A stretch of DNA of 64,000 bases from Bigelowiella natans CCMP2755 (Eukaryota; Protista; Cercozoa): the NCBI GenBank assembly GCA_000320545.1, contig ADNK01001700.1, forward strand, positions 21,683-85,682, read 5' to 3'. The notes under the pieces were generated by a model, which had not been told where the DNA came from, ran no database searches, and saw only the letters and a list, made by a program, of their open reading frames with translations. Both the position numbers and the translations under genes were made by a program. This document shows positions 3,001 to 49,781 of the stretch, one piece after another; the first letter of the stretch is position 1; each line of letters begins with the position of its first letter.

Positions 3001-4208
3001 GAGACAATTTCTTATTGCAAGTCGCCGCTTAATTAGGGATATTTTCAGCGAGATGTTCGAGGAACGAGGCTGTCGCGATGGCCTAGGCCCAGAACGAAGA
3101 ATCAATCCAGTTGTTCTAAAAAACGTGCTACCGGATGCTAAAGCGGTGGAAAAGCTCAGGTTAGAATGTGGGGTGACACTAATGAGACCTCGAGATGTCG
3201 TCAACATCCCAAGGTACACAGCAGGGTTATCGTTGGATCTTCCGATTCCCTTACAGCACCAGCAGCCAATTGGTAGTAGGAGGAAAAACACTATCCGCAA
3301 CCTTTTTCCTAAGGAGGCGGCGACTTTAGAAAGGCCTCAAGAAGGAGGGAAGTCAAAAGAAGCAGCTGCTCGAGAAACGTTCAGCAGTAACAGCAAGTCA
3401 ATCGGCAAGTATATGAAACGAATCTTGGTGCACGGAGAGGCAATTCAGCCGTGGAGACGTGTGGTCCACCTCCTCAAACCGTCGTCCAATCCAAAGCGGA
3501 ACGTTACAAGAATGCCTGAAAAGAAACTCGAAATCGATTGGGTGCACGGATATAACCCTGTTGACTCGCGCTCGAACGTAGTCCTAAATTCTGCTGGGGA
3601 GGTGGTATATCCTTGCGCGTCGCTGATAGTCGTGTACGACCCCAAAGAGCACTCGCAAAGAATCCTTCGAGGTCATACTTCAGACGTTCGGTGTCTTGCC
3701 CAAAATCCTGCAGATTGTGACATAATCGCTTCAGGTCAAGCTGGCTTCATCTCTAGTGATGGGACTGTTGCTCCACCGATGATTTGTTTGTTTAATACAA
3801 GAAACCCAAAACAGAAGTGGGTCATTCGTGAAGCCCATTTTCGTGCGGTGCGAGCGATGGCGTTCAATGCAAATGGCAAGATTCTTGCCTCTGTTGGAGA
3901 AGACCCCGAGGCAACGCTAAAGCTCTGGGCAGTGAAGCAGTCAAAATGGGTTTTTGAGACCACGCATACAAGTAAGGATTGTGGAATTGATCTACAGTTT
4001 TTTGTTCTTTTGTTGTAATTGTTGTCATTCATGCATCGTTTTGATGGAGCTTGACCACAATATACTGGTGGTTGCTGATCCTCCGCTGGTGGGAAAAATC
4101 GTATCCCAACGTCGACACAACGCAATTCCTGCACCCCTCACCAGTAGTAGCAAAAGATGATGTTCCACAAAACTAGACATTGCCTCAAACAATGACCGAT
4201 TGACACTG

Positions 4209-4244
<36 letters not shown>

Positions 4245-4484
4245 CTATATACATACACAAGGCTACTTAGCCAATACATTGAGTGCGTGCAGCCCGTGAG
4301 CCCCATAATGGAAATATAGATGCTACATTTAATCATCACGCCTGTTCCCCCTCCCCTTCTTTTGATAGGCAAAAAGAGTGGTTTGTGCTACGGAGTGGCT
4401 TGGAGTGCTAGCGACAATTCAAGATTTGTTACCATTGGTAACAATGGAATATGCGTCTGGTACCGCAACTATAATTACTACTAT

Positions 4485-4517
<33 letters not shown>

Positions 4518-6906
4518 CACTACTACCACTACTACTACTACTACTACATATTTTTGATTGCCACAATGAAGAAGTAAAAGAGACGGTCAATCGGCAACCG
4601 TGTACGTGAGGACTTCTTCTTTTCCACATCTTCGATGGGAGAAGTCAGATTTAAAAAATGGGAGGGAGGAGAAGCAAATAGAAAGATAAATCCGCATCTT
4701 GAGTGTGACAATCTTCTGCATTCAATAGGCAATATAGAATGGGAGTTCTTTCTGCTTCAAAGATTGAATTATGCGAGCCTCATCGGGATCTAAGGTGATA
4801 CTTTTATTACATATCGTCATCTGTTTGCAGTTTTGGGAGAAAATATTGAATTACCACATGTCGTATGTTAATTCATTTGAAACTTGAAGAATGTTTATAC
4901 AGTAGCACCCTTAATGCTGCAACCGCGGATCCATATTCCATAATATATATGTACACAATTGATATATTGAATATAATAATGGATATACGGTGCAATCCAT
5001 ACTGTTACATTGAATCGCTGCTGCAGACGTAAAATGTTGTTTATGTTTTAGGTTCCAGCAACCAATGAGCGTAGGATTTGACCAGAACAGTGAAAACAGA
5101 TTCATCGTTGGAATGCAAGGGACTGGAAATTTACACATCTTCGAGGTACTACTGACGTGGAACAATCCATCCACGTCATACATTCGATGATCCCGTCACC
5201 TGCTCAATTACTCACACGGGATTGATTGATTTGACCACAAAATACATACTACTCGTCTTGTCATCCTTTTGTATTTCAGGATGAAAAGCTAGTGGAGACC
5301 AAAAAGTGTCACTACGGATCCTGTAACTCGATTTCGACTTCAAAGGTGTGGAGGAGAAGACAAGGAGAGCATTAATCGTCAATGAAAATGGAGGATTTGA
5401 TAGTGATAATTTTGAGATCATCATCTTGCTGCTGCTGCTGCTGCTGCCTTTGATTATTAATCAAATGCTTTGTTAAATTGCTCCTCCTACCCCTACTACT
5501 ACTATGGTTATTAGGACTGGTTTGTGGCTGGATGTAGCGATGGCAAAGTGACTCTCATAAATCCAACCAATCTCGAGATTGAAAAAACGATCCAGGTGCT
5601 ATTTTGAGCACACTGAGCACACTAAACATACACATGTTGTCCTCTCTCTTATCGGTGGTTTGTATGTAATCAAGTGTAATAATCTTTAAACTATACACGG
5701 ACGTACACAAGCTGCTGCTGCTGCGCCAAAATTAAGTTGAATGGTGCTGTATTTATGTTGGGTGATGGTGGTGTCCAATACAATGATCAGTTTCCAAGTG
5801 GGGTTAGAAGCGTAAATTTACTACAAAACGCAATGGTTGCTGGCACTGTGGATGGGAAGGTACCATTAAAAAATCAACGGCTCAAAGTATATATTACTTT
5901 CGTTAGGGATAGGATATCTGCACTTCTTTTCTCGATTAAAGCCGCACTACTTTCTGAAAACATCATTGTTTCAAAACCCCCCCCCTTAAATTTGGGCGTG
6001 TAGAGGGAACTAGGGAGAAGGGAGGATCTGCACAGCAGCAGCCTAGATTTTCCTTTGTTCCTTTTTTCAATATTTTTCTCTCAAATTTATTATTCTGCAC
6101 CACCACCACCCTCCTCCTCGCTGATAGTGCTGCTGCTGCTGCTGCTGTTACTCTTCTTACTGCCATCGTCATCAGATCTACATCGTCGATGACTTGAAGA
6201 GATTCAAGCCACACCATGATCTTCCCGCACCAGTGGTAGAAGTACATTGTGGTGGGGGGCTGCTTAAAGGGATCGACTCGCATCCCTTATCCGTCAGTGG
6301 CCACGAGGAGTACGTCACAGCCGGCGACGATGGCTTGGTGTGTAGATGGTCGGTACGAATGCGCAAACCTTTACGATATGCACGGCTCAAAAGGTGGACA
6401 AGAAGAAGTAGTAGAAGAAGAGATATTCTTCAGCAGAGACAAACAATCAATAAAAACGACGACGACTCGAAGAAAGAGCTGAATTCCACGGTGCAGCGGC
6501 ACAATAGCGATAGCGAAGAAGCGAGGGAGGAGGTAAAAGAAAGTCTGCAGCATCAGCACCAGGCGCATAAATCGTCATCTTACCATCGGCACAATATTGA
6601 ATATCTTCCTTCCTTATCGTCCTCCGCCTCTGCAAGAAGTGTCTGCTACAGCCCTTCTGGCGAGCATTTAGCCGTTGGAACCCGGGATGGGGCACTCCAC
6701 GTATTAAGATGCAAAGACATGCAAACCATTTCCCACCATCAGCTCTCCGATTACTTTGGATCACTATTATCCTCATCATCAGTGATGGGTAACGACAGAA
6801 ATACGAAAGACATAATCTCTGGTGGTGGTGGTGGTGGTGGTGGTGGTGGTGGTGGTGGTTTAGATGATGCTGGCCAGGATGACTACTTCCACCATAGTAG
6901 CAGTAA

Positions 6907-6938
<32 letters not shown>

Positions 6939-7606
6939 CCAATAGTTGTGCATTCGAAGTGTTTGCGGTAAGGTATTCTCCATCAAATAGTCTCTTGGCC
7001 GTATGCATTGCGAAGCATATAATTCTCTGCAGTCCTGCGGAAGACTATGCCCCTAAGGCCGCTGTGGCTACGGGTTTGCAGTGTGATATTGAGGGAGGGT
7101 TAGATTGGTCTGCTGACGGGAACTACATTCAATTCGTTGATTCTTCGGAAATGATCCATTTCTTCGCCATTGATCAAGCGCGACCAGCCCTCTCCCGCAA
7201 AGTCGAGGAAATAGCCACCATGAAAAATATATCGTGGGCCTCTCGCACGTGCACAGCGACATGGTACCTGCAAGGAACCCGCTCGGAAACAGGGGATGGG
7301 AGCGACGTAAAGTCTGTTGATATCACGAAGGATTCGAAGTTGCTGCTAACAGGAGATCACCAGGGCAATGTTCATCTCTGCCGCTACCCGTGCATGGAGA
7401 CGAAGAACTTCCGGCGTACCGAATTTGCACACGGATGTGGGACGGTTAGGGTAAGGTGCTCGCCTCCCCTCATCAGTAAAGAGGCAGCAAAGAAGCTGAA
7501 GATAAATGCCATAGAAGAAGGGGGAGAAAGTAAAATTGACCAAACATTCGTGCTGTCGATTGGAGAAAAGGATAATACGATTATACAATGGAAGATTGTA
7601 AAATAG
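20..7606 (+). CDS. Echinoderm microtubule-associated protein-like (EML5/EML6-type) WD40 protein with two HELP+WD40 modules; multi-exon; 5' end may lie outside the window
   Basis: ORF 20..4018 has two HELP-like motifs (LKPAWVYGYN; KKLEIDWVHGYN...GEVVYPCASLIVVYD) and EML-type WD40 ends (LDWSADG; LITGDDFGLVSLFRWPC; SLGGRDKAIVQW). Intron donor near 3972, small GT-AG exons near 4369-4460, 5052-5144, 5515-5594, 5791-5859, and a last exon ~6176-7606 (LLLTGDHQGNVHLCRYPC; SIGEKDNTIIQWKIVK*). Confidence 0.9.
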
Positions 7607-33986: not shown

Positions 33987-36900
33987 ATGTCACAGCAGCT
34001 AGAAGAACAGCAGGACTTTGGCTCGCAGGCCGTGCAAGGGCACGAGCAGAAACAGGAAAGGAAGGGCGATACGGACGCTAAGGAAGGAGGAGGAACACCT
34101 CCACAGGCACCGCCGGGACCAGCACCCGGGATTAAGAAAGCAGATGCAGCAGCAGAGGCACTGGAGAACTTCTACGAGGCGGACGACGAGGACGTGGCCG
34201 CCGAAAGCAAGAAGGTCGTAATGGCATTACGAGCCTTGCGACCCAGGGCGAGCAACTACGCCAAACTGAAAGTATCGATAGAATACAAGTATCAGACACA
34301 TGATGTTTGGGCAGCTATCATGCAGGACATCATGGATTACGAAGCAGACTTACCTCCAGAGTGGGCAGCTTTGTTTAGGAACGACGGGGGTCTGGGCGCC
34401 TCGCGGGGGACGACCCAGAGCACCGTCAAGCAGCAGCAGCCGGTACAGCGGAACACCCAGTTCATGTCTGTTAAAACAGCACCGGTTATGATAACGAAAT
34501 ACAACGGGAAAAGAGGTGAGGCAAGGAGGTGGTGGAAGAACGCTAGGAGTATACTCTGCGACTTTACCCCTAACCCCACCGAAAACGACAAGCTCAAATG
34601 GCTAGCTATAATAAAGCAAGCCATGGACCTTTACGAGACAGGCAGGACCCGGATCAGGCAGCTAGAGAAAATACACACTACAGTTAGTGGGCTACGAGAC
34701 GTTGAGGCGATAATGAAGGCTTTTGTAAATGAACAGGATGCTAACTCCCTACCCCAGGCTATTAGAAAATACAGAGCAATGATGCAGCATGAGAGAGAAC
34801 CTGTTAGAGACTTTGCCACGCGCTTCCAGGATATGATCGACGAACTACATGATTTTAATTACAACACAGGTGATGATCAGGCAAGGTTTGAAGAGTTCAA
34901 GTTAAAGATAAAGGAATCCACTTACGTTACGGAGAAAGGCTACACCACGATGGAGGCAGCAGTGCAGGCTATATCCCTACGCGAGCAGGAGCAGGACCGC
35001 AAGTTTACCAGCCCTAAGGTACCTGGCATAGGAAACATTAACGCTATTAAGCCGCAGCGAGACTGGTACAAGGACAGGGAAGGTAACCGACGTTGCGGAT
35101 ACTGCTCACGTAAAGGGAAACACACCGCTAAAGACTGCAGAGACAGGAAAGAAGGACGACCCAGGATGACGATCAGGCAGCTCAACGAACACTACGAGAA
35201 GTTAAAGAGAAAGAAAGGCAGAGGACAAGGATATAACAACAGCAAATGGCAAGGCAGCAACAACGGGAAGAACAATAAATATAAGAACAAAAAGCAGAAC
35301 AGTATCAATGCTATACAGCAGCAGATAAACGGAATATTAGATCACCTTAAGCAGGCGCCGACGAAGACAGCAGTACCAGCAACGCAGGACCAAGACAAGC
35401 CCATGACCCTAGACGACATAAAGAACTTAGGAGTATGCAACATTAATGACGAAGACGCTAACAGGACTATCAAAGTTGCTATGACCAAGGTTAAAGTTAA
35501 AGACAGCTACGGAGACTACAAGAAACTACCTGCCCTTTGGGATAGTGGCAGCATGCCGAAGTCCTTCATAAGCCTAAGCACAGTAAGAAGGTTAGGACTA
35601 TTGGATCAAGTGACTAAGAAAGAACGTAAATATGCTCAAGCAGACGGAAGCTCTTCCATGAAGACCGTCGGTGAGCTAATGCTAAAGCTACAGATACCTG
35701 GCAGCGACGCGGAGACCCAAATCAAGACCCGAGTAGCCATGACTTTATCCATGGAACTACTCCTCGGACAGGATGCCCTAGAAAAATTAGGGGGGATCAT
35801 ATCATTCTACAATCACAAGATATACTTTGCTAAGTTGCCAAAGAAGTCAGGCAGGACCATCAGCCAGAACATGATACGGCTTGACGAGTGGACCTCTGAG
35901 TCAAGCGTTAATGCGTTAGAGTTTATGGACCTAGCGGACAACAAGCTACCTACACCTACCGAGCTACGGAAGAAGAACCCCGGCAAGACCATCCGACAGA
36001 TAACGGAGCTACTGGACAAGACCCCCCCAGCTGATGATTGGGATATCGACAAAGGCAAAAAGTACATTAATAAAATATTAAACGAGAAGTACTCTGACAT
36101 CACCAAGCCGACGACGAAGCCCTCCAGCAAGCTTACCCCAGTAAAGATCGAGCTAAAGAAGGGATACGAAGAGTGCATCATCAATGACCCAGAACATAGG
36201 CGACCGGAAGCGGACTGGGAAAAGATAGAGTGGCAGATCAATGAATGGGCAAAGGAAGGGAAGATAGAGCCAAGCAACTCACCATGGAACGTGAGACATG
36301 TGCTAGCTAAGAAACCTACTTACCCTTTCTTCCGCCTGGCGCACAACTTCATCCGCCACAACCGAGTAATAAAGAGGATCCAGACACCTACACCAAGGAT
36401 AGATGACGTTATTGAACACGTCATAGGATACAAATACTACTCTTCCCTAGATAAAAATGAATCATACATGCAGACACCCATCCACAAAACCTCCCGCCCC
36501 ATTACCGCGTTCTCCAGCAGGCACAGGAAGTGGCACTTCGTCGTATTCCCTTACGGCCTAAGCATATCAGGGGATGCGTTCAGTAGTCAGAACTACAGGG
36601 CATACACACATGATGGGATGGCGTCTGTGTTGTGGGTGTTTGTGTTTGTGTATGTGGATGATGACATAATATGTACCAACACAGTCGTCGCTCAGATCTT
36701 CCTCCTGGAAAATATATTTATTAGGTTTGCACACTTCGGTTTTACTATTAGACTGCAGAAGTGTACATTCCTAGCTACAAGAATCAAGTGGTGTGGATAT
36801 TACCTGGAGCAAGGCCGCATCACCCCAAACCCCGAGAAAGTAGCAGCACTACAGCAAGCCCCTAAACCTAAGAATGCAAAGGAGTTAAAGTCATTCTTGC

Positions 36901-38960
36901 AGACTGCAGCTTGGATACTACGTAGGTTCTCCCCTACCTACGCTAGGACTGCAGCTGCTTTTACTACTGCTTACCGGAAGGAGAACTCTGTAGGCCTCAG
37001 CTTCGCTAAGGTGTGGGCCAAGGCTGGCCTTGATGCCCACTTCGATAACCTAATAAAGTTATGCAGCAACACCCTATTGAATGCTAAGCTAGACACTACT
37101 AGACCAGCTACCCTATGGACAGACTGGTCTAAGCTAGGTATGGCTGCTGTACTTACCCAAGACCAGCAGATCATACGGGTGTGGGGCAGGGCCTGCACAG
37201 CAGCTGAGGCCAAGTACAGCCCTACAAAAGGAGAGTATAAAGCCATGACTGAGGCGCAGAGGAAACTAAGATACTACCTGCTGTCGGTGCCCAGCTTCAC
37301 CTTAATGACTGACCACAAGCCCCTCCTAGGCATCGACCGCAAGCTCGAAGCGCCTAACGATGAGTATGCAGCTATGAGGGCGGACACGGAAGAGTTTAGG
37401 GACAAGAGGACAGTGGTCTACGCACCAGGAGACAAGCAGCTTGCTGACTATTTCAGCAGGCTGTTCGAAAAGAAAGTCCCTACCCAGGTCACCCCTATGG
37501 TTAACGCGATTACCTTCGAGGACGGCGACTTCCTGCCTGAGCCAGAGGAGCTCCAGCACCTTCAAGAACACCTGGATAAATACAAACACAAGCATGAGGT
37601 ACTTAGTGATAGGATATATGTATACACTAATAATGTTAGGCGTACCTACGTGCCACGGCGGACCAGGGGAGCCCTTCTCTTTACCGCCCATGGACCTGCA
37701 CACGTAGGAGAAAACCATATCACTGCTCTACTCTACCATTACTACTGGCCCTACAAGCTAAAAGAGATAAGGACATACCTGCGTGGCTGCAGGTGCTCCA
37801 GCTTGAAGGCGGCAGGCGTCGCCACCAAGGAGTCCAGCAAGAGCCGTGCATCTAAGAAAATCAAAGCAAGGAACTTCTTAGATATCGTGCAAATTGATGT
37901 TTATAAGTACGATGGCTATCACTACCTTACCTTCGTTGATGTGGCCACTGGAAAGTGCTGGGTTAAAAAGATTATCAAGGTCAACGTTGCTAAGAAGAAC
38001 AAAGGCTTATATAAGCAGAGGCATACTAACTGCTACCGTACCTGGGAGTCTGAGCTCCAGGCTATCCCTGATGAAGTTAGCATAAACAAGATACCAAAGA
38101 AGTTACATGTGGATAATGAGACCTCTCTTCTACAGCTACCACACCCTAATATTGATGCCTCACCTGTATACTATGCCCAGTCCAACTCCAAGGTAGAGCG
38201 ACTCCACCGCACCTTGGCCAACCTAAGCAGGATAAATAGCACCACACCAGACAAGATACAAGGGTTAGTAAACGACACCTTCACGTCTGGGGGAGGTATC
38301 AAGGATAAGGAGAGGGAAGAAGGCGACGACAACGACGACGATACCGAGAGCGAAGACGAGAAGGTCCCGTACGATGGCCGAGTTCTAAAGGAAGGACAGT
38401 ATGTTAGGGCCAAGGTAAATCTGAGATCGAGAAATAAACAAGACCCCTTCTGGGGTGGCGTTGCAAAGGTTACCGAGAGGAAGGGGAGGAAGCAGTACTA
38501 CATCTATGATGGGAACAGGGTCACCTTGCGCCACATCAGTCACCTAAAGAATTATGATATCGGTGAGAAGCTCCTAGAGGATGTTAAAGTAAACCCTACT
38601 GTGTGGGAGCGAGCAATGCCTTGTTTAGGACCCCGACCTAAGTTCGATGTGGAATATGGAAACAATAAGGTCAGGGTGAACGACGATTGGCGCATGAAGA
38701 TTGTCTATCTAGGCTACCCTGGATTACGAAATATGGAGAGGGTAGCTATGAAAATAAAGGACGGAAAATATCAGCTACTCTACCTAGCTGTTCCCGACTT
38801 ACCCTTTGAGCACTGGTATAAGGTCCTGGGGGACCTTGATGCAGAGGGCTGGTATGGACACGAACCTAAGGACGAAGGTGAGTTCTGGGTAAGCGACAAA
38901 GGAGATAAGGTTAGAGAGGAATCTATTACCTGGTGGTTGGTGAAGTTCCGAAAGCGATGA
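33987..38960 (+). CDS. Gag-Pol polyprotein (1657 aa): Gag with CCHC knuckle, aspartic protease, RT, RNase H, integrase, C-terminal Dam-like domain
   Basis: CGYCSRKGKHTAKDC knuckle; ALWDSGS protease; RT motifs SPWN, SSLD, FPYGL, YVDD; RNase H WTDWS...KGE...TDHKPL...LADYFSR; integrase HHCC (H..AH...CRC), QIDV, HVDN, SNSKVERLHRTL. Confidence 0.95.
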   Translation: MSQQLEEQQDFGSQAVQGHEQKQERKGDTDAKEGGGTPPQAPPGPAPGIKKADAAAEALENFYEADDEDVAAESKKVVMALRALRPRASNYAKLKVSIEYKYQTHDVWAAIMQDIMDYEADLPPEWAALFRNDGGLGASRGTTQSTVKQQQPVQRNTQFMSVKTAPVMITKYNGKRGEARRWWKNARSILCDFTPNPTENDKLKWLAIIKQAMDLYETGRTRIRQLEKIHTTVSGLRDVEAIMKAFVNEQDANSLPQAIRKYRAMMQHEREPVRDFATRFQDMIDELHDFNYNTGDDQARFEEFKLKIKESTYVTEKGYTTMEAAVQAISLREQEQDRKFTSPKVPGIGNINAIKPQRDWYKDREGNRRCGYCSRKGKHTAKDCRDRKEGRPRMTIRQLNEHYEKLKRKKGRGQGYNNSKWQGSNNGKNNKYKNKKQNSINAIQQQINGILDHLKQAPTKTAVPATQDQDKPMTLDDIKNLGVCNINDEDANRTIKVAMTKVKVKDSYGDYKKLPALWDSGSMPKSFISLSTVRRLGLLDQVTKKERKYAQADGSSSMKTVGELMLKLQIPGSDAETQIKTRVAMTLSMELLLGQDALEKLGGIISFYNHKIYFAKLPKKSGRTISQNMIRLDEWTSESSVNALEFMDLADNKLPTPTELRKKNPGKTIRQITELLDKTPPADDWDIDKGKKYINKILNEKYSDITKPTTKPSSKLTPVKIELKKGYEECIINDPEHRRPEADWEKIEWQINEWAKEGKIEPSNSPWNVRHVLAKKPTYPFFRLAHNFIRHNRVIKRIQTPTPRIDDVIEHVIGYKYYSSLDKNESYMQTPIHKTSRPITAFSSRHRKWHFVVFPYGLSISGDAFSSQNYRAYTHDGMASVLWVFVFVYVDDDIICTNTVVAQIFLLENIFIRFAHFGFTIRLQKCTFLATRIKWCGYYLEQGRITPNPEKVAALQQAPKPKNAKELKSFLQTAAWILRRFSPTYARTAAAFTTAYRKENSVGLSFAKVWAKAGLDAHFDNLIKLCSNTLLNAKLDTTRPATLWTDWSKLGMAAVLTQDQQIIRVWGRACTAAEAKYSPTKGEYKAMTEAQRKLRYYLLSVPSFTLMTDHKPLLGIDRKLEAPNDEYAAMRADTEEFRDKRTVVYAPGDKQLADYFSRLFEKKVPTQVTPMVNAITFEDGDFLPEPEELQHLQEHLDKYKHKHEVLSDRIYVYTNNVRRTYVPRRTRGALLFTAHGPAHVGENHITALLYHYYWPYKLKEIRTYLRGCRCSSLKAAGVATKESSKSRASKKIKARNFLDIVQIDVYKYDGYHYLTFVDVATGKCWVKKIIKVNVAKKNKGLYKQRHTNCYRTWESELQAIPDEVSINKIPKKLHVDNETSLLQLPHPNIDASPVYYAQSNSKVERLHRTLANLSRINSTTPDKIQGLVNDTFTSGGGIKDKEREEGDDNDDDTESEDEKVPYDGRVLKEGQYVRAKVNLRSRNKQDPFWGGVAKVTERKGRKQYYIYDGNRVTLRHISHLKNYDIGEKLLEDVKVNPTVWERAMPCLGPRPKFDVEYGNNKVRVNDDWRMKIVYLGYPGLRNMERVAMKIKDGKYQLLYLAVPDLPFEHWYKVLGDLDAEGWYGHEPKDEGEFWVSDKGDKVREESITWWLVKFRKR

Positions 38961-41223: not shown

Positions 41224-44200
41224 ATGGGTGGATGCGGATCGACTCTAAGAAAGCAATTTCCCGAGGTTTCTTTTGACACTAAATTGATATTCACTGTGTG
41301 TATTCATTGTATGAAACTTTTCATGTTGAGCGTTTCAGTAACTGATACTTCGGAATCAATCTAATGATACGCAATGGATACACCCCTATTTTGCATATTT
41401 CCAGGCATATGATGGCGATTATCTTCCTCAATACGAAGGAAAGAGTCCCTTCTATGTTATGACAGCTGATGCGGTAAGTCATAGAGACGCGCAAGTATAA
41501 AATTAGCTGATAATGATTTTTCCAATCGTTACAGTGCCAAAAAATTCGGTATTCAAAGAAAGGTCCTGGTTCACAGGAAGAGACGCCAGCGACAAGTACA
41601 TACCCTTTGCAGTATCCTTTATGTTCACCTAATCCGTATACACCTTAACAGCTATTCATGAGTTACTAAACAAAGCTGCGGCGGAATCTGGCGACAAAGT
41701 CGCCATGCGTGTGGAACGGATTCCAGATAAAAAGAAGGTCGGCAAGATGGTTATTAATACTACGAATATATTCTCACATATTAGGATAAATTTATGCAAA
41801 TTTAGGGGGGATGGGTAACCCCATCGAAGGACAACCTTTCACTTCCTGATGATAAATGGGTCACATGGTCAGTGAACTTTTTATTCTAGGTGTATTTTGT
41901 TGATGCTATCCAATACTTTGGTTCAGGACCTATAAGCAGTACAAGAAGGACTGTGAGCAGGCAGCACGAGCTTTAATGGCAATGGGGGTTGAGCAGTTCG
42001 GAACGGTAATAGAAAGTGATAAAGAATACTTTAAACATTCCTAACCCATTAAGGCAAAGAATTACCCTAACACCCTTACTCATAGGTTGGAGTGTATGGA
42101 TTCAACGCACCGGAGTGGTTCATGGCAGAGATTTCTACAATGCTCTGCGGGGCAAAAGTTGCAGGAGTCTATCCTTCGGATTCGTAATCGCTATTTCGAA
42201 CTATAAGCGAGTGTCTTTGAAATATTGTGTAATGGCAGTGTGGAAAATGTTGTATTCAAGATGAAGCACTCTAAGTCGACAGTGATCGTGCTTGAGGATG
42301 AAAGTAAGCAAAATGTTTATTTTAATTAGGATGCACAGTGATTTGTTGATCCTTAGGTAAGCTTAAACGCCTCCAACCAGGAAAAGATAACATGGGGGAA
42401 GCTTACAATCCTCTTGTACCACATTCTTTCTCTTAATGACTGCTGAATCAAATGTACTGATAATGATACTAAAAGCTATCACTTCACTAGGATGAGCTTC
42501 CGGATTTGAAGTACATCGTTACATGGGCCGCGGGTGATGACTGCCCGAAAACACTCCAAGGGAAGCATGGAAAGGTCTAAATATACATAAGATTCTACCT
42601 ACAGAGATCCTGAAGTATCATCGTTAATGTTTTGAAAGGTACCTGTTGTATCTTGGAATGAGTTCTTGGAAATGGGTAAAAAGGTAATGAGTAGATGCCA
42701 TTGTAAGAAAATTGAATGACTAATTTGTGTATGTGAAGACTGAGATGAAGGCTCTCGAAGAGCGACAGGCGAAGATCAAACCGGGACACTGCTGCGCGCT
42801 TATCTACACCTCAGGTGTAGAAGCTGATATACCTTACAGCAACTAGAAAATGCCCTGAATCTCGATCATTTTCATTAGTAAAGTTATGCGAGAAATTTAA
42901 GATGCTGATAAATCTGACGAATTTAGGCACAACAGGGCGACCTAAAGCTGTGATGATCAGTCATGACAACATTTACTTCTGTGTAAGTGTTTATTTAGTT
43001 ACTGCAAGTTTCAGAGTTTCTAAAGACCCCTCCTCTTTTCTTGAGTTTTCAATTCAAAACGAACCTCGTTACCCTGATTTCCCCTGGTAATCTTAGGCTG
43101 GGATTACTATGCGTGGCGTCAATGGTTCGGGAATAGGTGCAGGGGGGCAAGAGCGTCTCATTTCGGTAACTCAATATAAATGACCGATTGTAGTTAAGTA
43201 GATATGATTATCGTTTATTATCTCACTTACCCTTTTAGTACCTCCCGTTAAGCCATGTTGCCGGTATGATGGTGGACATCATTGCACCAATATTTATAAC
43301 TGGTCCGTATCTCTAAATTTCACTAAACAATTTATGCTAATGAGTTAATTTGAAATAAAACATTGTACACACGGTTAATGCGCTTTTTATTGGTCGGCCG
43401 GGGTTTGGATCGATTACTTTTTATCTGCAATTTTGATGCATAGCGAATACAAACGGATGGACTACAGTCTCATTCGCCCGTCCCTACGACCTTAAGGTAG
43501 CAAAAAGGTTGATATGTGTCACATTTTGTATTTAGACTTCATTTACATCTAGGCTGGAACTATGGGGCATCGCCTTCGGGCTGTGAAGCCAACCCTTTTC
43601 CTTGGGGTAAAATGTCAATAATGCTACATTTCATTCCACTCAATCTGCTTTAATTGTTTAGGTACCTCGTGTGTGGGAGAAAGTTGCTGACAAAGTCAAA
43701 GCAGCTGGAAAGGCCAATACGGGTAGATTTACAGTACCGAACCAATTTTCTATAAAACCAATTTCTGAGAATTAATGTAGTTGCTTCCCTAATTAGGATT
43801 CAAAAAGTGGGCTGGGGAGTATATGAAGCCCAGACTTCTCGCACACTCTAAGGGAAAGAGCCTTTACAGCGAGCCGAACAATCCGTCAGGTCTCTCCATT
43901 GCAAAGTATTTCGCGAAGAAGGTACAGACGCAGCTTGGCCTTTCAGAGCTCAAGTATGCCGCTACTGCGGCTGCACCTATTCAAACTGAAACGTTGGAAT
44001 ATTACGGGTCTTTGGGTATCCTTGTGAAGGAGGTGTATGGCATGTCCGAGTGTGCGGGTGCAACTACAATCTCACGCGATGATGCTCACGTCTGGGGTTC
44101 TGTTGGGTTTCCCACTCCCGGTATTGAGTTCAAGGTGCTAAAAGAGGGAAAAGACGGAAAGTTTGAGGAAGTTCCACGCGCGAAAAATATTTTCGAAGCC

Positions 44201-45067
44201 AGCGAGGAAGAACAGGGTGAATTATGCTATCGCGGCCGCCACATCATGATGGGATATCTAGCTAATCCCGATTTCAAGGAAGATGGAGGCTCGGAGTGGG
44301 CTAAAAAAAAGAATGAGAGCGCGATCGACGAAAATGGTTGGCTTCATTCTGGCGACAAAGGCTGTATGGACAAGCACGGAATGATCAAAATCACGGGCCG
44401 CTACAAGGAGCTCATCATCGGTGCTGGTGGAGAGAACGTTGCTCCTGTTCCTATTGAGGATCATGTTAAGAAACTAGCTCCTGCCATCTCGAACTGTATG
44501 ATGGTCGGAGATAAGAGGAAGTACAACATTGCCCTAGTCACACTCAAGGTGGAGGGCGCAACAGGGGAAGAGGCTGGGGGTAACGAGTTGACAGCACTGT
44601 CGAAACTTGTCAAAGGCGTCGAAACAGTCCAGGATGCAATGAATAACAAGGAATATATCAACAAGATCATGGCGGCATTCGTTGCGACGAACAAGAACCC
44701 TAAAGTATGCCCGAAGTCAGCCTCTAAAATCGGAAGATTCACCATCCTTCCTGTGGACTTTTCCACGAACGGAGGAGAGCTCACTGCAACATTGAAGCTT
44801 AAGCGTTCTGTCGTCGCAAAGATGTACGAAGAAGTTATTGAAAAGGTGTACGCAGCAAAATTGGAAAAGGGTGAGGCTTATGTTAACATTTTTGGGGGTT
44901 CCGAGATGAAAATGGGAGAAAAGACCGGAGGGGAAGAGGGGAAGAAGATGGAAGAGGAAAAGGGCAAGGCAATTGATAAGCAAGAAGCGGAAGATCCTAA
45001 AGCAGAAGAAGCACCCAAACCAGCTGTAAAACCGGAGGGAGTAAAGCCCATGCTGGCGGCAAAATAA
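41224..45067 (+). CDS. ACSBG: Long-chain fatty acyl-CoA synthetase, bubblegum (ACSBG) type; many short introns
   Basis: AMP-binding motif LIYTSG|TTGRPKAVMISHDN; YLPLSHVAG; FLGVPRVWEK; EVYGMSE; GELCYRGRHIMMGY; GWLHSGD; ITGRYKELIIGAGGENVAPVPIE; GELTATLKLKR. N-terminus MGGCGS. Confidence 0.92.
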
Positions 45068-46316: not shown

Positions 46317-49124
46317 TTACTCATCATCAAGCTCATCGCACAAAAGCTCCTCCGAAGCTGCGACATACTTCTGAGCCACGAGGCACTCCGCTACCCACAT
46401 GAAGCTGATGACTAGTCCGCTGAAACCGTTGTAGTACACCTCTCTCTGCCCAGATATGACGGCCTCCACCCTTCTCGGCACTTTCTTTTTGCTTATGCGA
46501 TCGATGATCACAAGCTCCGCCCCCGCAGCGCGCAAGACGGCCTGTTGATCTTGTTTCAAGTTGAAGGACGCGAAAGTATAGCCGTAGAACAGCCGTGATT
46601 CCTTGCCCAATGGTTGCAAGCCCTTCCGCTTGATGAGATCAGGATCTCTTTTGGGCCGTCGGGGCATGGCCTCGCTCATCTTTGTGCGTGGGAAGTTGCA
46701 CGCATACTTAAGCGGATCAGCCAGTCCGCGTGTGCGCTTGCATTCATTGAGGAAATCCGGATGGAAGGGGAGTAGACCCCTTGCCAAAGCATACAAGAAC
46801 TTTCTTGTCATCAGAGGTCTTGGTGCAACCACCATAGCCACAGAACCCCCCTCCTCCTCCTCCCCCTCAAACAGCAAGTCTTCCTCGGATATCGCTTCGG
46901 ATACTGTCCCAACAACCTTCCCCCCCATCTTCTTTATCAGCTTACTCAATCGTGCAGTTGTGGCCTCATTGAGGCGGGTAAAGAGGAAAGAAAATCCCTT
47001 CAACACCTTGTTAAGTGCAACCCGGTGATGTGTTTCCTCCTCGCTCATGACGTCTTTGTCTTTCTCTTGATCATCAGGGATTGGAATGCCTCTCTTCGTT
47101 CTGCGACTGCCCGCTGTTCTACCCTTCCTTGTTGATTTTTTTGCCTTCCTCGTCCGTCCCTTCCTCCGCTTTTTTTCCTCCCCCTCCTCCTCCTCTTCGA
47201 GTTGGTGTGGCCGTCCCCCTCGGTTAGCTCTGCCTATATCATTTGGGAGAACAGGCATAGTCGTATCGCCTTCCTTGAGGTAAATCCCAAGAGGCCTTAC
47301 CCCAATCTTCTGTACGTGGGGAACCCAGTAGTAGTTCTGCTTACCAAACTTTTCCTCGGCAAAGCTTTGGTCTGCAATGTCTCGCACCTCCTTCCTGACT
47401 CGACGTCCCGTATAAAGATGAACCATCTTCTGCTCGCTGGAGAGGTCTAGCAGCGCAATGCGTGGCCAGCCCCTTGTCGCTGCTTTCAGCGCCGCATCTC
47501 TCGGATAGCGGTTACGGAAAATTACACCGTCAGAGTGGAGGAGGCGATAGATGCGCTTCTTCTTCGCTGTCTTTTTCGGCTGCTGGGCTTGTTGAATAGA
47601 GCGCCACTTGTCTTTGAGATTCGTCGGTGTTCTTGACTCGTGGAACTCTCCCCCCCCGGCCTCCAGTATCTGTTTCCATCGCCCCGGCTCAAACTCATGC
47701 ACGAGGTCCAGCAACAGTTCTGTCTCCTCCACGCCCCACCTCACGGGCTTTTTCCTTCCGGCTGGACGATGCTTAGCGATACGCTGTGCCCTCTCATGCT
47801 CTCGCTGCTGCTTGATGAGAAGATTTCGATATTTCATCCTGAGATCTGAGGGTGTACGGTTGATGAGTATGTCCTGGTAAGCCCCGAGAATCTCTGCCCA
47901 TTGCCCTTCGCCAAGCTCTTCAACGCCCTCTAGAAGCGCTCTGACCTCCACCTGAGTCCATCGTCGATCATATTCTTCTTCCCGAGGCACGGGAATCCGT
48001 TTGGATCGCTTTTGCGGTGGTGAAGATACCTCGCTGCTACTGCTCTTATCGCCTTTTTCTTCCTCCTCTCTTTTTGCGTCCTCTTTACTGTCCGCAGCGA
48101 TCCTTCGACTTCTTCTTTTTCTCCCAGCTGCACCCGTTGCATTTCTCCGACCCTTTTTCTTACCGTTGTTGTCGGCAGCAGCGGCCTTAACGCCCTTGCT
48201 CTTCCGTTTTTTCCCCGGTGTCTTCAGGTTGAAAAGATCGATATTGAGTGGTTTGCTCCGAGAATTTCGAGTGCTCCTTGTCCTCAGAGATGATGAATTA
48301 GCGGATGATGCTTTCTTTTTCTGCTGTTTTGTCTTCTTTTGTGCGGCACCACTCACTTGCTTCCTTGCCGCTGCTTTTCGGCTTGCCTGTCGAGCTGCTG
48401 TCCTATTTCTACGAGAACCTGTTGTCGTCGTCGTTGCCGAAGCAGAGCGTGTTTGCGGTCGGCGGTCAGCCACCAATACCCGAGTAGTCTGTTTTCGAGG
48501 GGCAGCTGAACTAGGACGTGTTCTTCGGCTTCTTCTCGTGGTCACAGCATTGATCTATTTTAAGGTTGAGAGCAGAGTAAATTAATCAATAATTAAGCTA
48601 AGCTATACTCCTTTCTTACGTTCTATTTAGTAAGATGATGGATCCACCTTTTTTCTGGGGGCTGCAGATGTCGTCGATCTGGACCGAGTCCCTCTTCTGC
48701 TCCCCGCCCGAGTCGCCATCCTTCGTGTAGAGGAGGGCCCATCAGATTTCGGTGGTTGGGTGCTTGCTGTCTTCCTTGTCCTCCTGCGCACAACCTTCTT
48801 CCTCGGAGCGCTGCTGGCTGTCCGTCTACTGGAGGCTTTCTTTCTAGGAGCTGCAACGCTCCTTGATCGGGCCCCTGTTTCTTTTGCTGGGCGGGAAGGC
48901 TCACCCCTCGCTGAGCGGGATCTTGTCTGTGAAACTTTCTTCCGAGCGCGTACTTGCCGCTGCTGCTCACTTTTTCTCTCGGTGGAGGAACGGGGTCGGG
49001 AACGTTTGGCTCTTTGTGAAGATTGTCTGGCAGTGATCGAAGCATTGCCCCCACTATTTCGATTGCGAACTGATTTGCGTGCCGTGATTCTTGAAGACCG
49101 GCGAGGTTGAGATGATCCTTCCAT
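46317..49124 (-). CDS. Basic N-terminus + two telobox-type Myb domains + MC1-like chromatin domain + tandem BRCT protein (2 exons, ~904 aa)
   Basis: Exon 1 49124-48648 (donor AAG|GTGGAT) and exon 2 48554-46317 (acceptor AATAG|ATC) join in phase 0. Myb1 RRWTQVEVRALLEGVEELGEGQWAEIL...RTPSDLRMKYRNL; Myb2 VRWGVEETELL...GRWKQIL...RTPTNLKDKWRSI; MC1-like YPRDAALKAATRG; BRCTs LKGFSFLFT...IKKMGGKV...TRKFLYALARG and LFYGYTF...LRAAGA...WVAECL. Confidence 0.88.
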
Positions 49125-49781
49125 CGTCAACGGCAAAGCTAGCCAATTGGCACTGCAAGTACAAAATCAAAATGTTAAAAGGCATAGTATATTGATCTTT
49201 CCGTGGTAATTTATTTCATCGTCATGGAATATGCATAATAGAGTATTCCCATAGGAATAAACACTATCAGAAGCTCGATTTTTCTAAGGGGCAAAGATAA
49301 AATATGACATTCCAAAACGAAGTAAAACTAATCTAACAAATCACATAACATATATAATTATATTTCCGGCCCATTTTGTTCCCTTCGCCAGTGCCCCTCC
49401 CCCAGCGTCCTTATTCCATCACATCACATGTTGTGTTCCACCTCAACGGTTGCTTTGTAAACTCTATTCAGACTCAAGTATATATTCTGTCATCCATATA
49501 TTTAACGTTTTGTAATACGTTGTCATGGGACGACTTGCATAATGATCTGAAAATACTAGAATATACATAAGAAAATGATATTTTCTGTCACGAGAGTCAA
49601 TAAAAATACGAATAAACATTTACTCAAAAACCAAATTCATCCCAAAATCCAACGGACATACTTGCATCGGGAAGAAATGGATGTCAATTAATTTGAACGT
49701 CAAAGAAATAACTGGATTAATTTCAATAATTGGGTGCAATTGCCCTAGGAAAAAAATAACATCATAATTCTGAAATGGACG

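What the first reader, a model, noticed from the sequence alone, without database searches (positions are those of the whole stretch)
47290..47565. Archaeal/giant-virus MC1 chromatin domain embedded in a eukaryotic telobox-Myb / tandem-BRCT protein
Seen: between Myb2 and the BRCTs the ORF reads KKRIYRLLHSDGVIFRNRYPRDAALKAATRGWPRIALLDLSSEQKMVHLYTGRR...WVPHVQKIG. Known: the non-histone DNA-bending protein MC1 of Methanosarcina and haloarchaea reads RNFVLRDEDG...VFTGKQPRQAALKAANRG...IRLRERGTKKVHVF...KPFVKK, and MC1-like proteins also occur in giant viruses. The blocks match colinearly over the whole domain. Known: plant TRB/SMH proteins fuse a telobox Myb to a histone H1 globular domain, and Rap1 combines BRCT with Myb. 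Inference: MC1 may fill the linker-histone role in a telomere/DNA-damage chromatin protein. I do not recognise this architecture as described.
Basis: partly seen in the sequence, partly recalled or inferred. Interest (0 to 1): 0.88.

Follow-up and report, generated by a model that had tools for sequence, protein, structure and literature searches.

The report
Archaeal MC1 domain in algal Myb-BRCT protein
A nuclear gene of the alga Bigelowiella natans encodes a chromatin-type protein in which a genuine copy of the archaeal DNA-bending protein MC1 sits between telomere-type Myb domains and a BRCT domain, and the same Myb-MC1 pairing turns up in a few other distant protists, which no paper I could find describes.

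Summary
One uninterrupted ORF (window 46317..48545, minus strand; JGI model Bigna1/76227, Bigelowiella natans) carries a basic tail, two Myb domains, a roughly 90-residue segment (47286..47567) and a BRCT. Pfam's MC1 model scores that segment below threshold (18.5 vs 23 bits). Better tests settle homology: a profile of four orthologue-like proteins against 30 bona fide MC1 proteins gives hhalign probability 97.5%, E 7e-12. An HMM of those 30 scores the segment 46.6 bits (2000 shuffles: at most 10.2). The AlphaFold model (pLDDT 88) has MC1's strand/helix order, and its best viral structural matches are giant-virus MC1-domain proteins. The Arg25 and Trp74 equivalents are kept. The Myb domains best match telomeric TRF/TBP Mybs. 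Only the first BRCT is confirmed; "tandem" is not. Myb+MC1 also occurs in Bonamia ostreae and Gefionella okellyi, and these domains form one clade (77% bootstrap) nearest to DPANN archaea and prokaryote-type viral contigs, not giant viruses. The proposed function is inferred: Myb reads a repeat, MC1 bends the DNA, BRCT recruits phosphoproteins. I rate it a new variant of a known kind, of moderate to high interest.

The parts
46317..48545 (-). Uninterrupted ORF (742 codons plus stop) holding every domain of the protein. It is the last and main exon of JGI model Bigna1/76227 (exon 46320..48554).
48648..49045 (-). Two short 5' exons of the JGI model (49045..48794 and 48719..48648). They are doubtful: the first gap changes frame and lacks clean GT..AG ends in my mapping. 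An alternative K/R/S-rich ORF at 48627..49136 overlaps them.
47976..48545 (-). N-terminal basic low-complexity region (ORF residues 1-190; pI 12.0, K+R 31%, S+T 23%).
47817..47963 (-). Myb/SANT domain 1 (ORF residues 195-243).
   Evidence: PF00249, 62.8 bits for the two stretches together
47592..47738 (-). Myb domain 2, telobox type (ORF residues 270-318). The third-helix LKDKWR motif is at 47601..47621. It lies directly upstream of MC1, as in all eight Myb-linked relatives.
47286..47567 (-). MC1 domain (ORF residues 327-420; core 329-415 = 47301..47561). Predicted order is strand, strand, helix, strand, strand, an arm carrying an extra helix, then strand. The Arg25 equivalent lies in the PR motif at 47490..47507 and the Trp74 equivalent at 47319..47333.
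47208..47225 (-). Conserved GGRP-type (AT-hook-like) motif in the charged linker after MC1 (linker = ORF residues 421-505, window 47031..47285). It is kept in P0002 and P0004 and variant in P0003.
   Evidence: no Pfam AT-hook hit, so this is inference only
46704..47009 (-). BRCT domain 1 (ORF residues 513-614), of the Rtt107 BRCT5 / Brc1 BRCT5 type. The conserved APRP..TRKF stretch aligns with the corresponding stretch of Brc1.
46320..46628 (-). C-terminal conserved region (ORF residues 640-742), the possible second BRCT. It is conserved with P0002 but matches no BRCT model significantly.
   Evidence: (BRCT_3 E 0.13)

Best explanation
This is a cellular, nucleus-encoded chromatin protein of the chlorarachniophyte alga Bigelowiella natans. 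A genuine MC1 domain, homologous to the monomeric DNA-bending chromosomal protein of Methanosarcinales and DPANN archaea, has been built into a eukaryotic multidomain protein. The order is basic tail, Myb, telobox-type Myb, MC1, charged linker with a GRP motif, BRCT, and possibly a second BRCT. Shown: domain identities, their order, their presence in one ORF, conservation in relatives, and the retained Arg25 and Trp74 DNA-contact positions. Inferred mechanism: the telobox Myb reads a double-stranded telomere-type repeat (B. natans is reported to have canonical repeats). The MC1 domain, tethered by a basic linker of some 10-20 residues that is present in all Myb-MC1 proteins, binds and sharply bends or compacts the adjacent DNA. 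This resembles the role of the H1/H5 globular domain in plant telobox TRB/SMH proteins. The BRCT module, of the Brc1/Rtt107/53BP1 class, docks a phosphorylated partner and so couples this architectural DNA binding to damage or replication signalling. I put the domain identity at about 0.97. The confidence given below is for the whole statement, including the inferred function.
For: Organism and gene: 100% match to JGI Bigna1/76227. MC1 homology: hhalign of the four orthologue-like proteins against 30 bona fide MC1 proteins gives probability 97.5%, E 7e-12. The custom MC1 HMM gives 46.6 bits against at most 10.2 for 2000 shuffles. Profile A2 hits only MC1 (1t23) in the PDB, E 1e-13. Relatives found by phmmer pass Pfam's MC1 cut-off: P0012 62.6, P0011 51.1, P0009 40.8, P0005 32.6 and P0007 31.5 bits. 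216 prokaryotic MC1 loci, overwhelmingly archaeal, were confirmed by tblastn. Fold: the AF2 model (pLDDT 88.3) has strands at 16-20, 27-30, 47-52, 59-71 and 90-103 and a helix at 33-42. That matches the order described for MC1 in PMC6776556. BFVD top hits are giant-virus MC1-domain proteins with probability 0.99-1.0. The invariant P-R pair aligns with Pro24-Arg25 and the Trp aligns with Trp74. Myb type: the best PDB matches are TRF1, TRF2 and plant TBP1/RTBP1 (E 2e-7 to 1e-12), against c-Myb at E 0.36. BRCT: PF00533 26.5 bits (cut-off 21.3) and RTT107_BRCT_5 27.0 bits (cut-off 27). The best PDB hits are all tandem-BRCT phosphopeptide readers: Brc1, 53BP1, Crb2, TopBP1 and MDC1. Not an artefact: a single ORF here and in relative L001, cellular neighbours, and no other MC1 ORF in the window. 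Canonical telomere repeats in B. natans are reported in PMC13746701.
Against: Pfam's own MC1 model scores below its cut-off (18.5 vs 23 bits). A profile of the four orthologue-like proteins alone does not reach MC1 in the PDB. Foldseek against the PDB returned no MC1 entry. A bona fide MC1 control also failed there, so that negative says nothing either way. Gln26 is replaced by Asp and Pro72 by Tyr. The arm is longer and carries a predicted helix, so DNA bending may differ. In the two malawimonad-type proteins the Trp is replaced by Lys. The second BRCT is undetected. No expression, localisation or binding data exist here. The N-terminus of the gene model is uncertain. Telomere specificity is inferred only from Myb similarity.
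Confidence: 0.6

Rival explanations
1. The protein has the same domains but is not telomeric. It would be a general DNA-damage or replication scaffold, or a transcription and chromatin factor in the manner of Brc1/Rtt107/PTIP. The Myb domains and MC1 would give non-specific or structure-specific binding to bent, distorted or damaged DNA, and the BRCT would read a phosphorylated histone or partner.
For: The BRCT's closest matches are the gamma-H2A-reading pair of Brc1 and RTT107_BRCT_5. MC1 binds DNA largely without sequence specificity and prefers bendable or distorted DNA (PMC6776556). Telobox-type Mybs also act at interstitial sites in other lineages (established knowledge of plant TRB proteins). 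Myb1 carries only a partial telobox motif.
Against: The Myb profile matches telomeric Myb structures far better than c-Myb or SANT structures. The Myb-MC1 module exists without any BRCT in Bonamia and Gefionella, so the conserved core is the Myb plus MC1 DNA-binding pair rather than the damage-signalling part.
Confidence: 0.28
2. The protein is imported into the periplastidial compartment and packages the reduced nucleomorph genome of the chlorarachniophyte endosymbiont. MC1 would compensate for the nucleomorph's reduced set of chromatin proteins.
For: B. natans has a nucleomorph whose chromatin proteins are partly nucleus-encoded (established knowledge). The four full-architecture proteins look like orthologues from one group. 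The N-terminus of the gene model is unresolved, so a targeting peptide cannot be excluded.
Against: Myb-MC1 relatives occur in Bonamia ostreae and Gefionella okellyi, which have no nucleomorph. Neither candidate N-terminus reads like a hydrophobic signal peptide; both are K/R/S-rich. This was judged by eye and not tested with a predictor.
Confidence: 0.05
3. The MC1-like segment is not a real feature of a cellular gene. It would be a chance similarity, an assembly chimera with archaeal contaminant DNA, or part of an endogenous giant-virus insertion of the kind reported for B. natans.
For: The Pfam score is below threshold. B. natans is known to carry virus-derived insertions (established knowledge, not checked here). 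GC content is slightly higher at 46-48 kb (0.51) than in the flanks.
Against: Statistics far exceed chance. The same domain order occurs in one ORF in an independent assembly at 41% identity and in two further proteins. The neighbours are ordinary eukaryotic genes: an EML-like WD40 protein and an acyl-CoA synthetase. Giant-virus MC1 proteins are less similar (16-26% identity) than archaeal ones. A scan of IMG/VR with the domain profile confirmed no relative.
Confidence: 0.02

Closest known systems
Archaeal chromosomal protein MC1 (Methanosarcina thermophila; PDB 1T23, 2KHL, 2NBJ; Pfam PF05854)
   Same: Homologous over the whole roughly 90-residue domain. The predicted order of secondary-structure elements is the same. 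The Pro24-Arg25 pair, the alanine-rich helix, His56 and Trp74 equivalents are conserved.
   Different: MC1 is a free-standing monomeric protein of about 90-100 residues in archaea and some bacteria. Here it is an internal domain of a eukaryotic protein of 742 or more residues. Gln26 is replaced by Asp and Pro72 by Tyr. The arm is about 10 residues longer, with a predicted helix. Identity is only 32-38%, and Pfam's model scores below its cut-off.
Giant-virus MC1-like proteins (Mimivirus gp275/R252; chlorovirus, klosneuvirus and marseillevirus MC1-domain proteins)
   Same: Both are MC1 folds outside archaea in the eukaryotic sphere. They are the best BFVD structural matches (probability 0.99-1.0, TM about 0.5). 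gp275 is reported to bind, bend and condense DNA (bioRxiv 10.1101/2024.02.22.580433).
   Different: The viral proteins are packaging proteins with disordered tails and are not fused to Myb or BRCT. Sequence identity to the window's domain is only 16-26%. The preprint reports no algal MC1 hits by BLASTp, whereas this gene is in an alga.
Plant TRB/SMH proteins (telobox Myb plus histone H1/H5 globular domain)
   Same: Same design principle: a telomere-type Myb joined to a small non-specific architectural DNA-binding domain (established knowledge). The Myb profile matches plant telomere-binding Mybs.
   Different: The architectural domain is a winged-helix H1/H5 fold in plants and an MC1 fold here. 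Plant TRBs have a single N-terminal Myb and a C-terminal coiled coil, and no BRCT. This is an analogy, not membership.
TRF1/TRF2/Taz1/Tbf1 and plant TBP1/RTBP1 telomeric Myb proteins
   Same: The Myb domains give the best PDB matches to these proteins. The LKDKWR-type third helix is present.
   Different: No TRFH dimerisation domain was detected. There are two Mybs in tandem. The Myb is internal rather than C-terminal and is followed by MC1 and BRCT.
Brc1 / Rtt107 / PTIP C-terminal BRCT5-BRCT6 pair, and the 53BP1/MDC1/Crb2 tandem BRCTs
   Same: The first BRCT matches RTT107_BRCT_5 at its cut-off and Brc1 BRCT5 is the best PDB hit. The conserved ..TRKF stretch aligns with the Brc1 stretch.
   Different: The second BRCT is not demonstrable. 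None of those proteins carries Myb or MC1 domains. Phosphopeptide binding is untested.
Rap1 (BRCT + Myb + RCT)
   Same: It combines BRCT and Myb-type domains in a telomere protein (established knowledge).
   Different: In Rap1 the BRCT is N-terminal and single and an RCT domain ends the protein. Here the BRCT is C-terminal and no RCT was found in the Pfam scan.

Membership tests
MC1 (PF05854, non-histone chromosomal protein MC1) | Significant match to the curated family model | tested here: not met
   Pfam MC1 gives 18.5 bits, E 0.0025, below the gathering score of 23. The relative P0004 also scores 18.0 bits.
MC1 (PF05854, non-histone chromosomal protein MC1) | Homology to bona fide members by profile methods over the full domain length | tested here: met
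   hhalign gives probability 97.5%, E 7.3e-12, 85 columns. An HMM of 30 members scores 46.6 bits against at most 10.2 in 2000 shuffles. Profile A2 hits 1t23 at E 9.6e-14. 216 prokaryotic loci, mostly archaeal, were confirmed by tblastn.
MC1 (PF05854, non-histone chromosomal protein MC1) | MC1 fold: strand 1, strand 2, helix, strand 3, strand 4, long arm, strand 5 | tested here: met
   The AF2 model (pLDDT 88.3) shows this order, with an extra helix in the arm and a C-terminal helix. The published element list is in PMC6776556. BFVD Foldseek hits are MC1-domain proteins. This rests on a prediction only. PDB Foldseek was uninformative: no MC1 hit for the query or for a bona fide control.
MC1 (PF05854, non-histone chromosomal protein MC1) | DNA-contact residues Arg25 and Trp74 (plus Gln23, Gln26, Pro72) | tested here: inconclusive
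   The Arg25 and Trp74 equivalents are present, and Arg is invariant in all 12 aligned sequences. Gln26 is replaced by Asp, Gln23 by Tyr and Pro72 by Tyr.
MC1 (PF05854, non-histone chromosomal protein MC1) | Free-standing small basic monomer that bends DNA | tested here: not met
   Here it is an internal domain of a multidomain protein. The domain is still basic (pI 10.5). Bending itself cannot be tested with these tools.
Telobox (telomeric) Myb proteins | Myb/SANT domain above the curated cut-off | tested here: met
   PF00249 gives 62.8 bits (cut-off 24.4) over two stretches, residues 195-243 and 270-318.
Telobox (telomeric) Myb proteins | Closest to telomeric rather than c-Myb or SANT Mybs, with a telobox third helix | tested here: met
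   The top PDB hits are TBP1, RTBP1, TRF1, AtTRP1 and TRF2 (E 2e-7 to 4e-4 with the orthologue-only profile), against c-Myb at E 0.36. With profile A1, TRF1 scores E 1.3e-12. The LKDKWR motif is at ORF residues 309-315.
Telobox (telomeric) Myb proteins | Binding to double-stranded telomeric repeats | not testable with these tools
   No binding or occupancy data. The window contains no telomeric repeat arrays.
Tandem BRCT phosphopeptide readers (Brc1/Rtt107/53BP1/MDC1 class) | First BRCT repeat | tested here: met
   PF00533 gives 26.5 bits (cut-off 21.3) and PF16770 RTT107_BRCT_5 gives 27.0 bits (cut-off 27) on the C-terminal 243 residues.
Tandem BRCT phosphopeptide readers (Brc1/Rtt107/53BP1/MDC1 class) | Second BRCT repeat packed against the first | tested here: inconclusive
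   The only signal is BRCT_3 at E 0.13 on the last roughly 20 residues. The relative shows nothing and there is no internal repeat signal. The region is conserved with P0002.
Tandem BRCT phosphopeptide readers (Brc1/Rtt107/53BP1/MDC1 class) | Phosphate-binding Ser/Thr and Lys in BRCT1 | tested here: inconclusive
   A conserved Thr/Ser after the first strand and a conserved TRK stretch are present in all three aligned proteins. The TRKF stretch aligns with the Brc1 stretch. Residue-level equivalence to the phosphate-binding positions was not verified against a structure.
Plant TRB/SMH (Myb + H1/H5) | Histone H1/H5 globular (winged-helix) domain after the Myb | tested here: not met
   There is no linker-histone Pfam hit, and the position is occupied by MC1. 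The resemblance is functional analogy only.

The most novel reading that the evidence does not exclude
The telobox-Myb plus MC1 module may be an old eukaryotic chromatin invention. In this reading an archaeal nucleoid protein domain was acquired once, either vertically from the archaeal ancestor or by a very early transfer from DPANN-like archaea or their viruses. It was then welded to a telomere-type Myb and now survives only in scattered protist lineages: Rhizaria (chlorarachniophytes and Ascetosporea) and malawimonads. There it would shape chromosome ends much as H1-type domains do in plant TRB proteins. It would also supply the 'missing' eukaryotic or algal MC1 that the giant-virus MC1 literature has looked for.
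Probability: 0.12. Interest if true: 0.85.

Novelty: new variant of a known kind. Interest (0 to 1): 0.62.

Why it matters
MC1 is treated in the literature as an archaeal nucleoid protein, with some bacterial and, recently, giant-virus members. The Mimivirus gp275 preprint states explicitly that no algal MC1 was found. This gene is a bona fide MC1 domain in a cellular eukaryotic gene of an alga. It is not alone: it is fused to a telomere-type Myb in at least three distant protist groups, and in the chlorarachniophyte-type proteins it is extended by a DNA-damage-type BRCT. That gives a second, independent solution to the design seen in plant TRB/SMH proteins, where a sequence-reading Myb is joined to a small architectural domain. 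It also adds a data point on how archaeal chromatin parts entered eukaryotic chromatin, and a candidate cellular link in the archaea-alga-giant-virus route proposed for viral MC1. Current Pfam thresholds miss the domain in this protein, so similar cases are probably under-annotated.

Tried and rejected
1. Single-sequence tests are weak. Pfam MC1 is sub-threshold, PDB phmmer gives E 0.8, and NCBIfam gives nothing.

2. A word-index search with the isolated domain found nothing in the 58-185 residue range.

3. A profile of only the four orthologue-like proteins does not reach MC1 in the PDB. hhalign against an MC1 family profile was needed.

4. Foldseek against the PDB returned no MC1 entry. A control with a bona fide MC1 (P0012, Pfam 62.6 bits) failed in the same way, so I set this negative aside as uninformative.

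5. An IMG/VR scan with the domain profile confirmed no relative. A scan with a bona fide MC1 profile gave 7 contigs. The one whose context I examined looks like a prokaryote-type virus, not a giant virus.

6. The JGI metagenome scan returned only the contig already known from P0002.

Cluster look-ups gave names only for Bonamia and Gefionella. A literature search for the accession prefix of L001 was useless.

8. Second BRCT: Pfam on the isolated C-terminus, a three-sequence profile against the PDB and an internal repeat test were all negative or sub-significant.

9. 5' gene model: the upstream ORF shows no significant similarity to the N-terminus of P0002, so this stays unresolved.

11. I rejected chance similarity, contamination or chimera, and endogenous giant-virus origin as explanations (see rivals).
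Full report
WHAT IS THERE. The finding lies in a 742-codon ORF on the minus strand (window 46317..48545). The protein is 100% identical to JGI model Bigna1/76227 of Bigelowiella natans, a chlorarachniophyte alga of the Rhizaria (P0001, 853 aa). The contig is not human.

The neighbouring long ORFs are ordinary eukaryotic genes. They include an EML-like WD40 protein at 20..7606 and an acyl-CoA synthetase exon at 43823..45067. There is also one retroelement-like ORF at 33987..38960.

The JGI model adds two short 5' exons (49045..48794 and 48719..48648). I mapped them but did not join exons myself, so the joined step was left out. The pieces were searched apart. The 5' part is doubtful, but every domain discussed here lies in the single long ORF.

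DOMAINS. Pfam finds two Myb domains at ORF residues 195-243 and 270-318 (62.8 bits). It also finds a BRCT at 513-551 that continues as RTT107_BRCT_5 to residue 614. The N-terminal 190 residues are a very basic low-complexity tail (pI 12).

The HMM-aligned span is 47286..47567. The stated coordinates are therefore right to within a few bases, although literally one base out of frame.

IS IT MC1? Single-sequence evidence is suggestive but weak:
- MC1 is the top Pfam family for the isolated segment, but below threshold (18.5 bits against 23).
- MC1 (1t23) is the only PDB sequence hit, at E 0.8.

An exhaustive phmmer search of 1.8 billion representatives gave 12 hits. Three are orthologue-like proteins with 52-58% identity in the domain (P0002-P0004). 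Eight are more distant. Five of those eight pass Pfam's MC1 cut-off on their own: P0012 62.6, P0011 51.1, P0009 40.8, P0005 32.6 and P0007 31.5 bits.

Three cleaner tests followed:
- A profile of only the window segment plus P0002-P0004 was compared with a profile of 30 bona fide MC1 proteins, including ones named MC1 from Euryarchaeota and Myxococcota. This gave hhalign probability 97.5%, E 7.3e-12, with 85 columns spanning positions 3-90 of a 90-residue archaeal MC1.
- An HMM of those 30 proteins scores the window segment 46.6 bits. The best of 2000 shuffles scored 10.2 bits.
- tblastn of the segment confirmed 216 MC1 loci in prokaryotic genomes. The best 80 are in DPANN archaea and Methanotrichaceae/Methanosarcinales, apart from one bacterial MAG, mostly at 32-38% identity.

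The homology is therefore real. Pfam's model is simply too narrow for this branch.

STRUCTURE. AlphaFold2 with a 12-sequence alignment gives a confident model (pLDDT 88.3, pTM 0.75). It has strands at 16-20, 27-30, 47-52, 59-71 and 90-103 and a helix at 33-42. That is the order published for MC1: strand 1, strand 2, helix, strand 3, strand 4, arm, strand 5 (PMC6776556). The model also has an extra helix inside a longer arm and a C-terminal helix.

Foldseek against BFVD returns giant-virus proteins as top hits, with probability 0.99-1.0 and TM about 0.5. Many are named 'Chromosomal protein MC1 domain-containing protein', from a Mimivirus MAG, Edafosvirus, Catovirus, Faunusvirus and Yasminevirus. 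Foldseek against the PDB returned no MC1 entry. A model of the bona fide MC1 protein P0012 failed in the same way, so that negative says nothing.

Alignment to the 1t23 chain shows which DNA-contact positions are kept:
- The invariant Pro-Arg pair corresponds to Pro24-Arg25. Arg25 is described as essential for neutralising the compressed major groove.
- The Trp before the last strand corresponds to the intercalating Trp74.
- His56 is kept.
- Gln23, Gln26 and Pro72 are replaced by Tyr, Asp and Tyr.

THE OTHER DOMAINS. Profiles containing the Myb region hit telomeric Myb structures first. These are human TRF1 and TRF2, zebrafish Terfa and plant TBP1/RTBP1/AtTRP1, at E 1e-12 to 1e-6. c-Myb trails at E 0.36 with the orthologue-only profile. 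Myb2 carries the LKDKWR-type third helix at residues 309-315.

The first BRCT passes PF00533 and sits at the cut-off of RTT107_BRCT_5. Its best PDB matches are sub-significant (E 0.009-2), but all are tandem-BRCT phosphopeptide readers: Brc1, 53BP1, Crb2, TopBP1 and MDC1.

The C-terminal ~100 residues are conserved with P0002 but match no BRCT model.

RELATIVES AND ORIGIN. The full architecture (Myb, Myb, MC1, BRCT region) recurs in P0002. That gene is one uninterrupted ORF on an independent contig (L001 2186..4519). The architecture also recurs in the truncated P0003. P0004 is a fragment.

Myb+MC1 without BRCT occurs in several proteins:
- Bonamia ostreae (P0007, MES1922730.1; two Mybs);
- Gefionella okellyi (P0010, a malawimonad);
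- P0008 and P0009, whose organisms are unnamed.

In all eight Myb-linked proteins the telobox Myb directly precedes MC1 through a short basic linker.

In neighbour-joining trees of the domain, the eight Myb-linked sequences plus the short P0005 and P0006 form one clade. Bootstrap support is 117/200 with unlabelled MC1 proteins and 154/200 with labelled archaeal and viral loci.

The clade's nearest neighbours are P0012, five IMG/VR contigs and DPANN archaea. The context of one of those contigs (L090) shows compact prokaryote-type genes with weak UvsX-like and tail-fibre PHROG hits, so it is not a giant virus. The domain is short, the method is simple, and no giant-virus sequences could be put into the tree. 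The origin statement is therefore tentative.

The identities point the same way: 32-38% to archaeal MC1 against 16-26% to giant-virus MC1. This is an archaeal-type domain rather than a recent giant-virus capture.

HOW IT PROBABLY WORKS (inference). The Myb pair reads a double-stranded telomere-type repeat. B. natans is reported to have canonical repeats (PMC13746701). MC1, tethered a few residues away, binds and sharply bends or compacts the adjacent DNA, using the retained Arg and Trp. The basic tail and a conserved GGRP-type motif at 47208..47225 would add non-specific contacts. The BRCT would recruit a phosphorylated partner.

The closest functional analogy is the plant TRB/SMH family, which joins a telobox Myb to an H1/H5 globular domain. 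That is an analogy and not membership.

The rivals are a non-telomeric damage or replication scaffold (0.28), a nucleomorph chromatin protein (0.05) and an artefact or viral insertion (0.02).

NOVELTY. Full-text searches found no paper linking MC1 with Myb, telomeres or Bigelowiella. The Mimivirus gp275 preprint states that no algal MC1 hits were found. The precomputed Pfam listing for the B. natans protein lacks MC1. The listing for the Bonamia protein shows Myb+MC1, so the pairing is visible in automatic annotation but, as far as I could find, undiscussed. I rate it a new variant of a known kind.

Short search keys typed into scripts were copied from the window's own translation. The retroelement-like ORF was only scanned against Pfam and nothing was built from it.

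Noticed in passing
window 33987..38960 (+): A 1657-aa uninterrupted ORF with reverse transcriptase (RVT_1) and RT-associated RNase H Pfam hits. It is retroelement-like and lies in a stretch with strong A-over-T skew (34-40 kb).
   Followed up: no
window 48627..49136 (-): The 5' exons of the JGI model look doubtful. The first gap (74 nt) changes frame without clean GT..AG ends in my mapping. An alternative uninterrupted K/R/S-rich ORF with repeated APRKK-like motifs overlaps them and resembles the protein's basic tail in composition. It shows no significant similarity to the relative's N-terminus.
   Followed up: partly
window 47208..47225 (-): A GGRP-type, AT-hook-like motif directly after the MC1 domain. 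It is conserved in P0002 and P0004 and variant in P0003. No Pfam AT-hook hit.
   Followed up: no
L083-L087 and L089-L093 (IMG/VR contigs of 44-76 kb); MC1 gene at L090 10001..10279: Uncultivated viral contigs carry a standalone MC1 gene (Pfam 69.7 bits). The one examined, L090, has compact prokaryote-type ORFs and weak UvsX-like and tail-fibre PHROG hits. Five of these contigs (L083-L087), together with P0012, are the neighbour-joining sister of the eukaryotic Myb-MC1 clade.
   Followed up: partly
Foldseek PDB library: The NMR entries of MC1 (1t23, 2khl, 2nbj) are not retrieved even with a model of a bona fide MC1 protein. Structure searches for this fold in that library give false negatives.
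   Followed up: yes
BFVD hit A0A2U7UBS8: The best viral structural match is an uncharacterised 392-aa Pandoravirus neocaledonia protein (E 4e-4, 26% identity, rmsd 3.3 over 104 columns). This suggests an unannotated MC1-like domain in pandoraviruses.
   Followed up: no
window 20..7606 (+) and 43823..45067 (+): The neighbouring genes are an EML-like (HELP motif plus double beta-propeller) WD40 protein split over at least two long ORFs, and the C-terminal exon of an AMP-binding acyl-CoA synthetase. This is ordinary cellular context.
   Followed up: no
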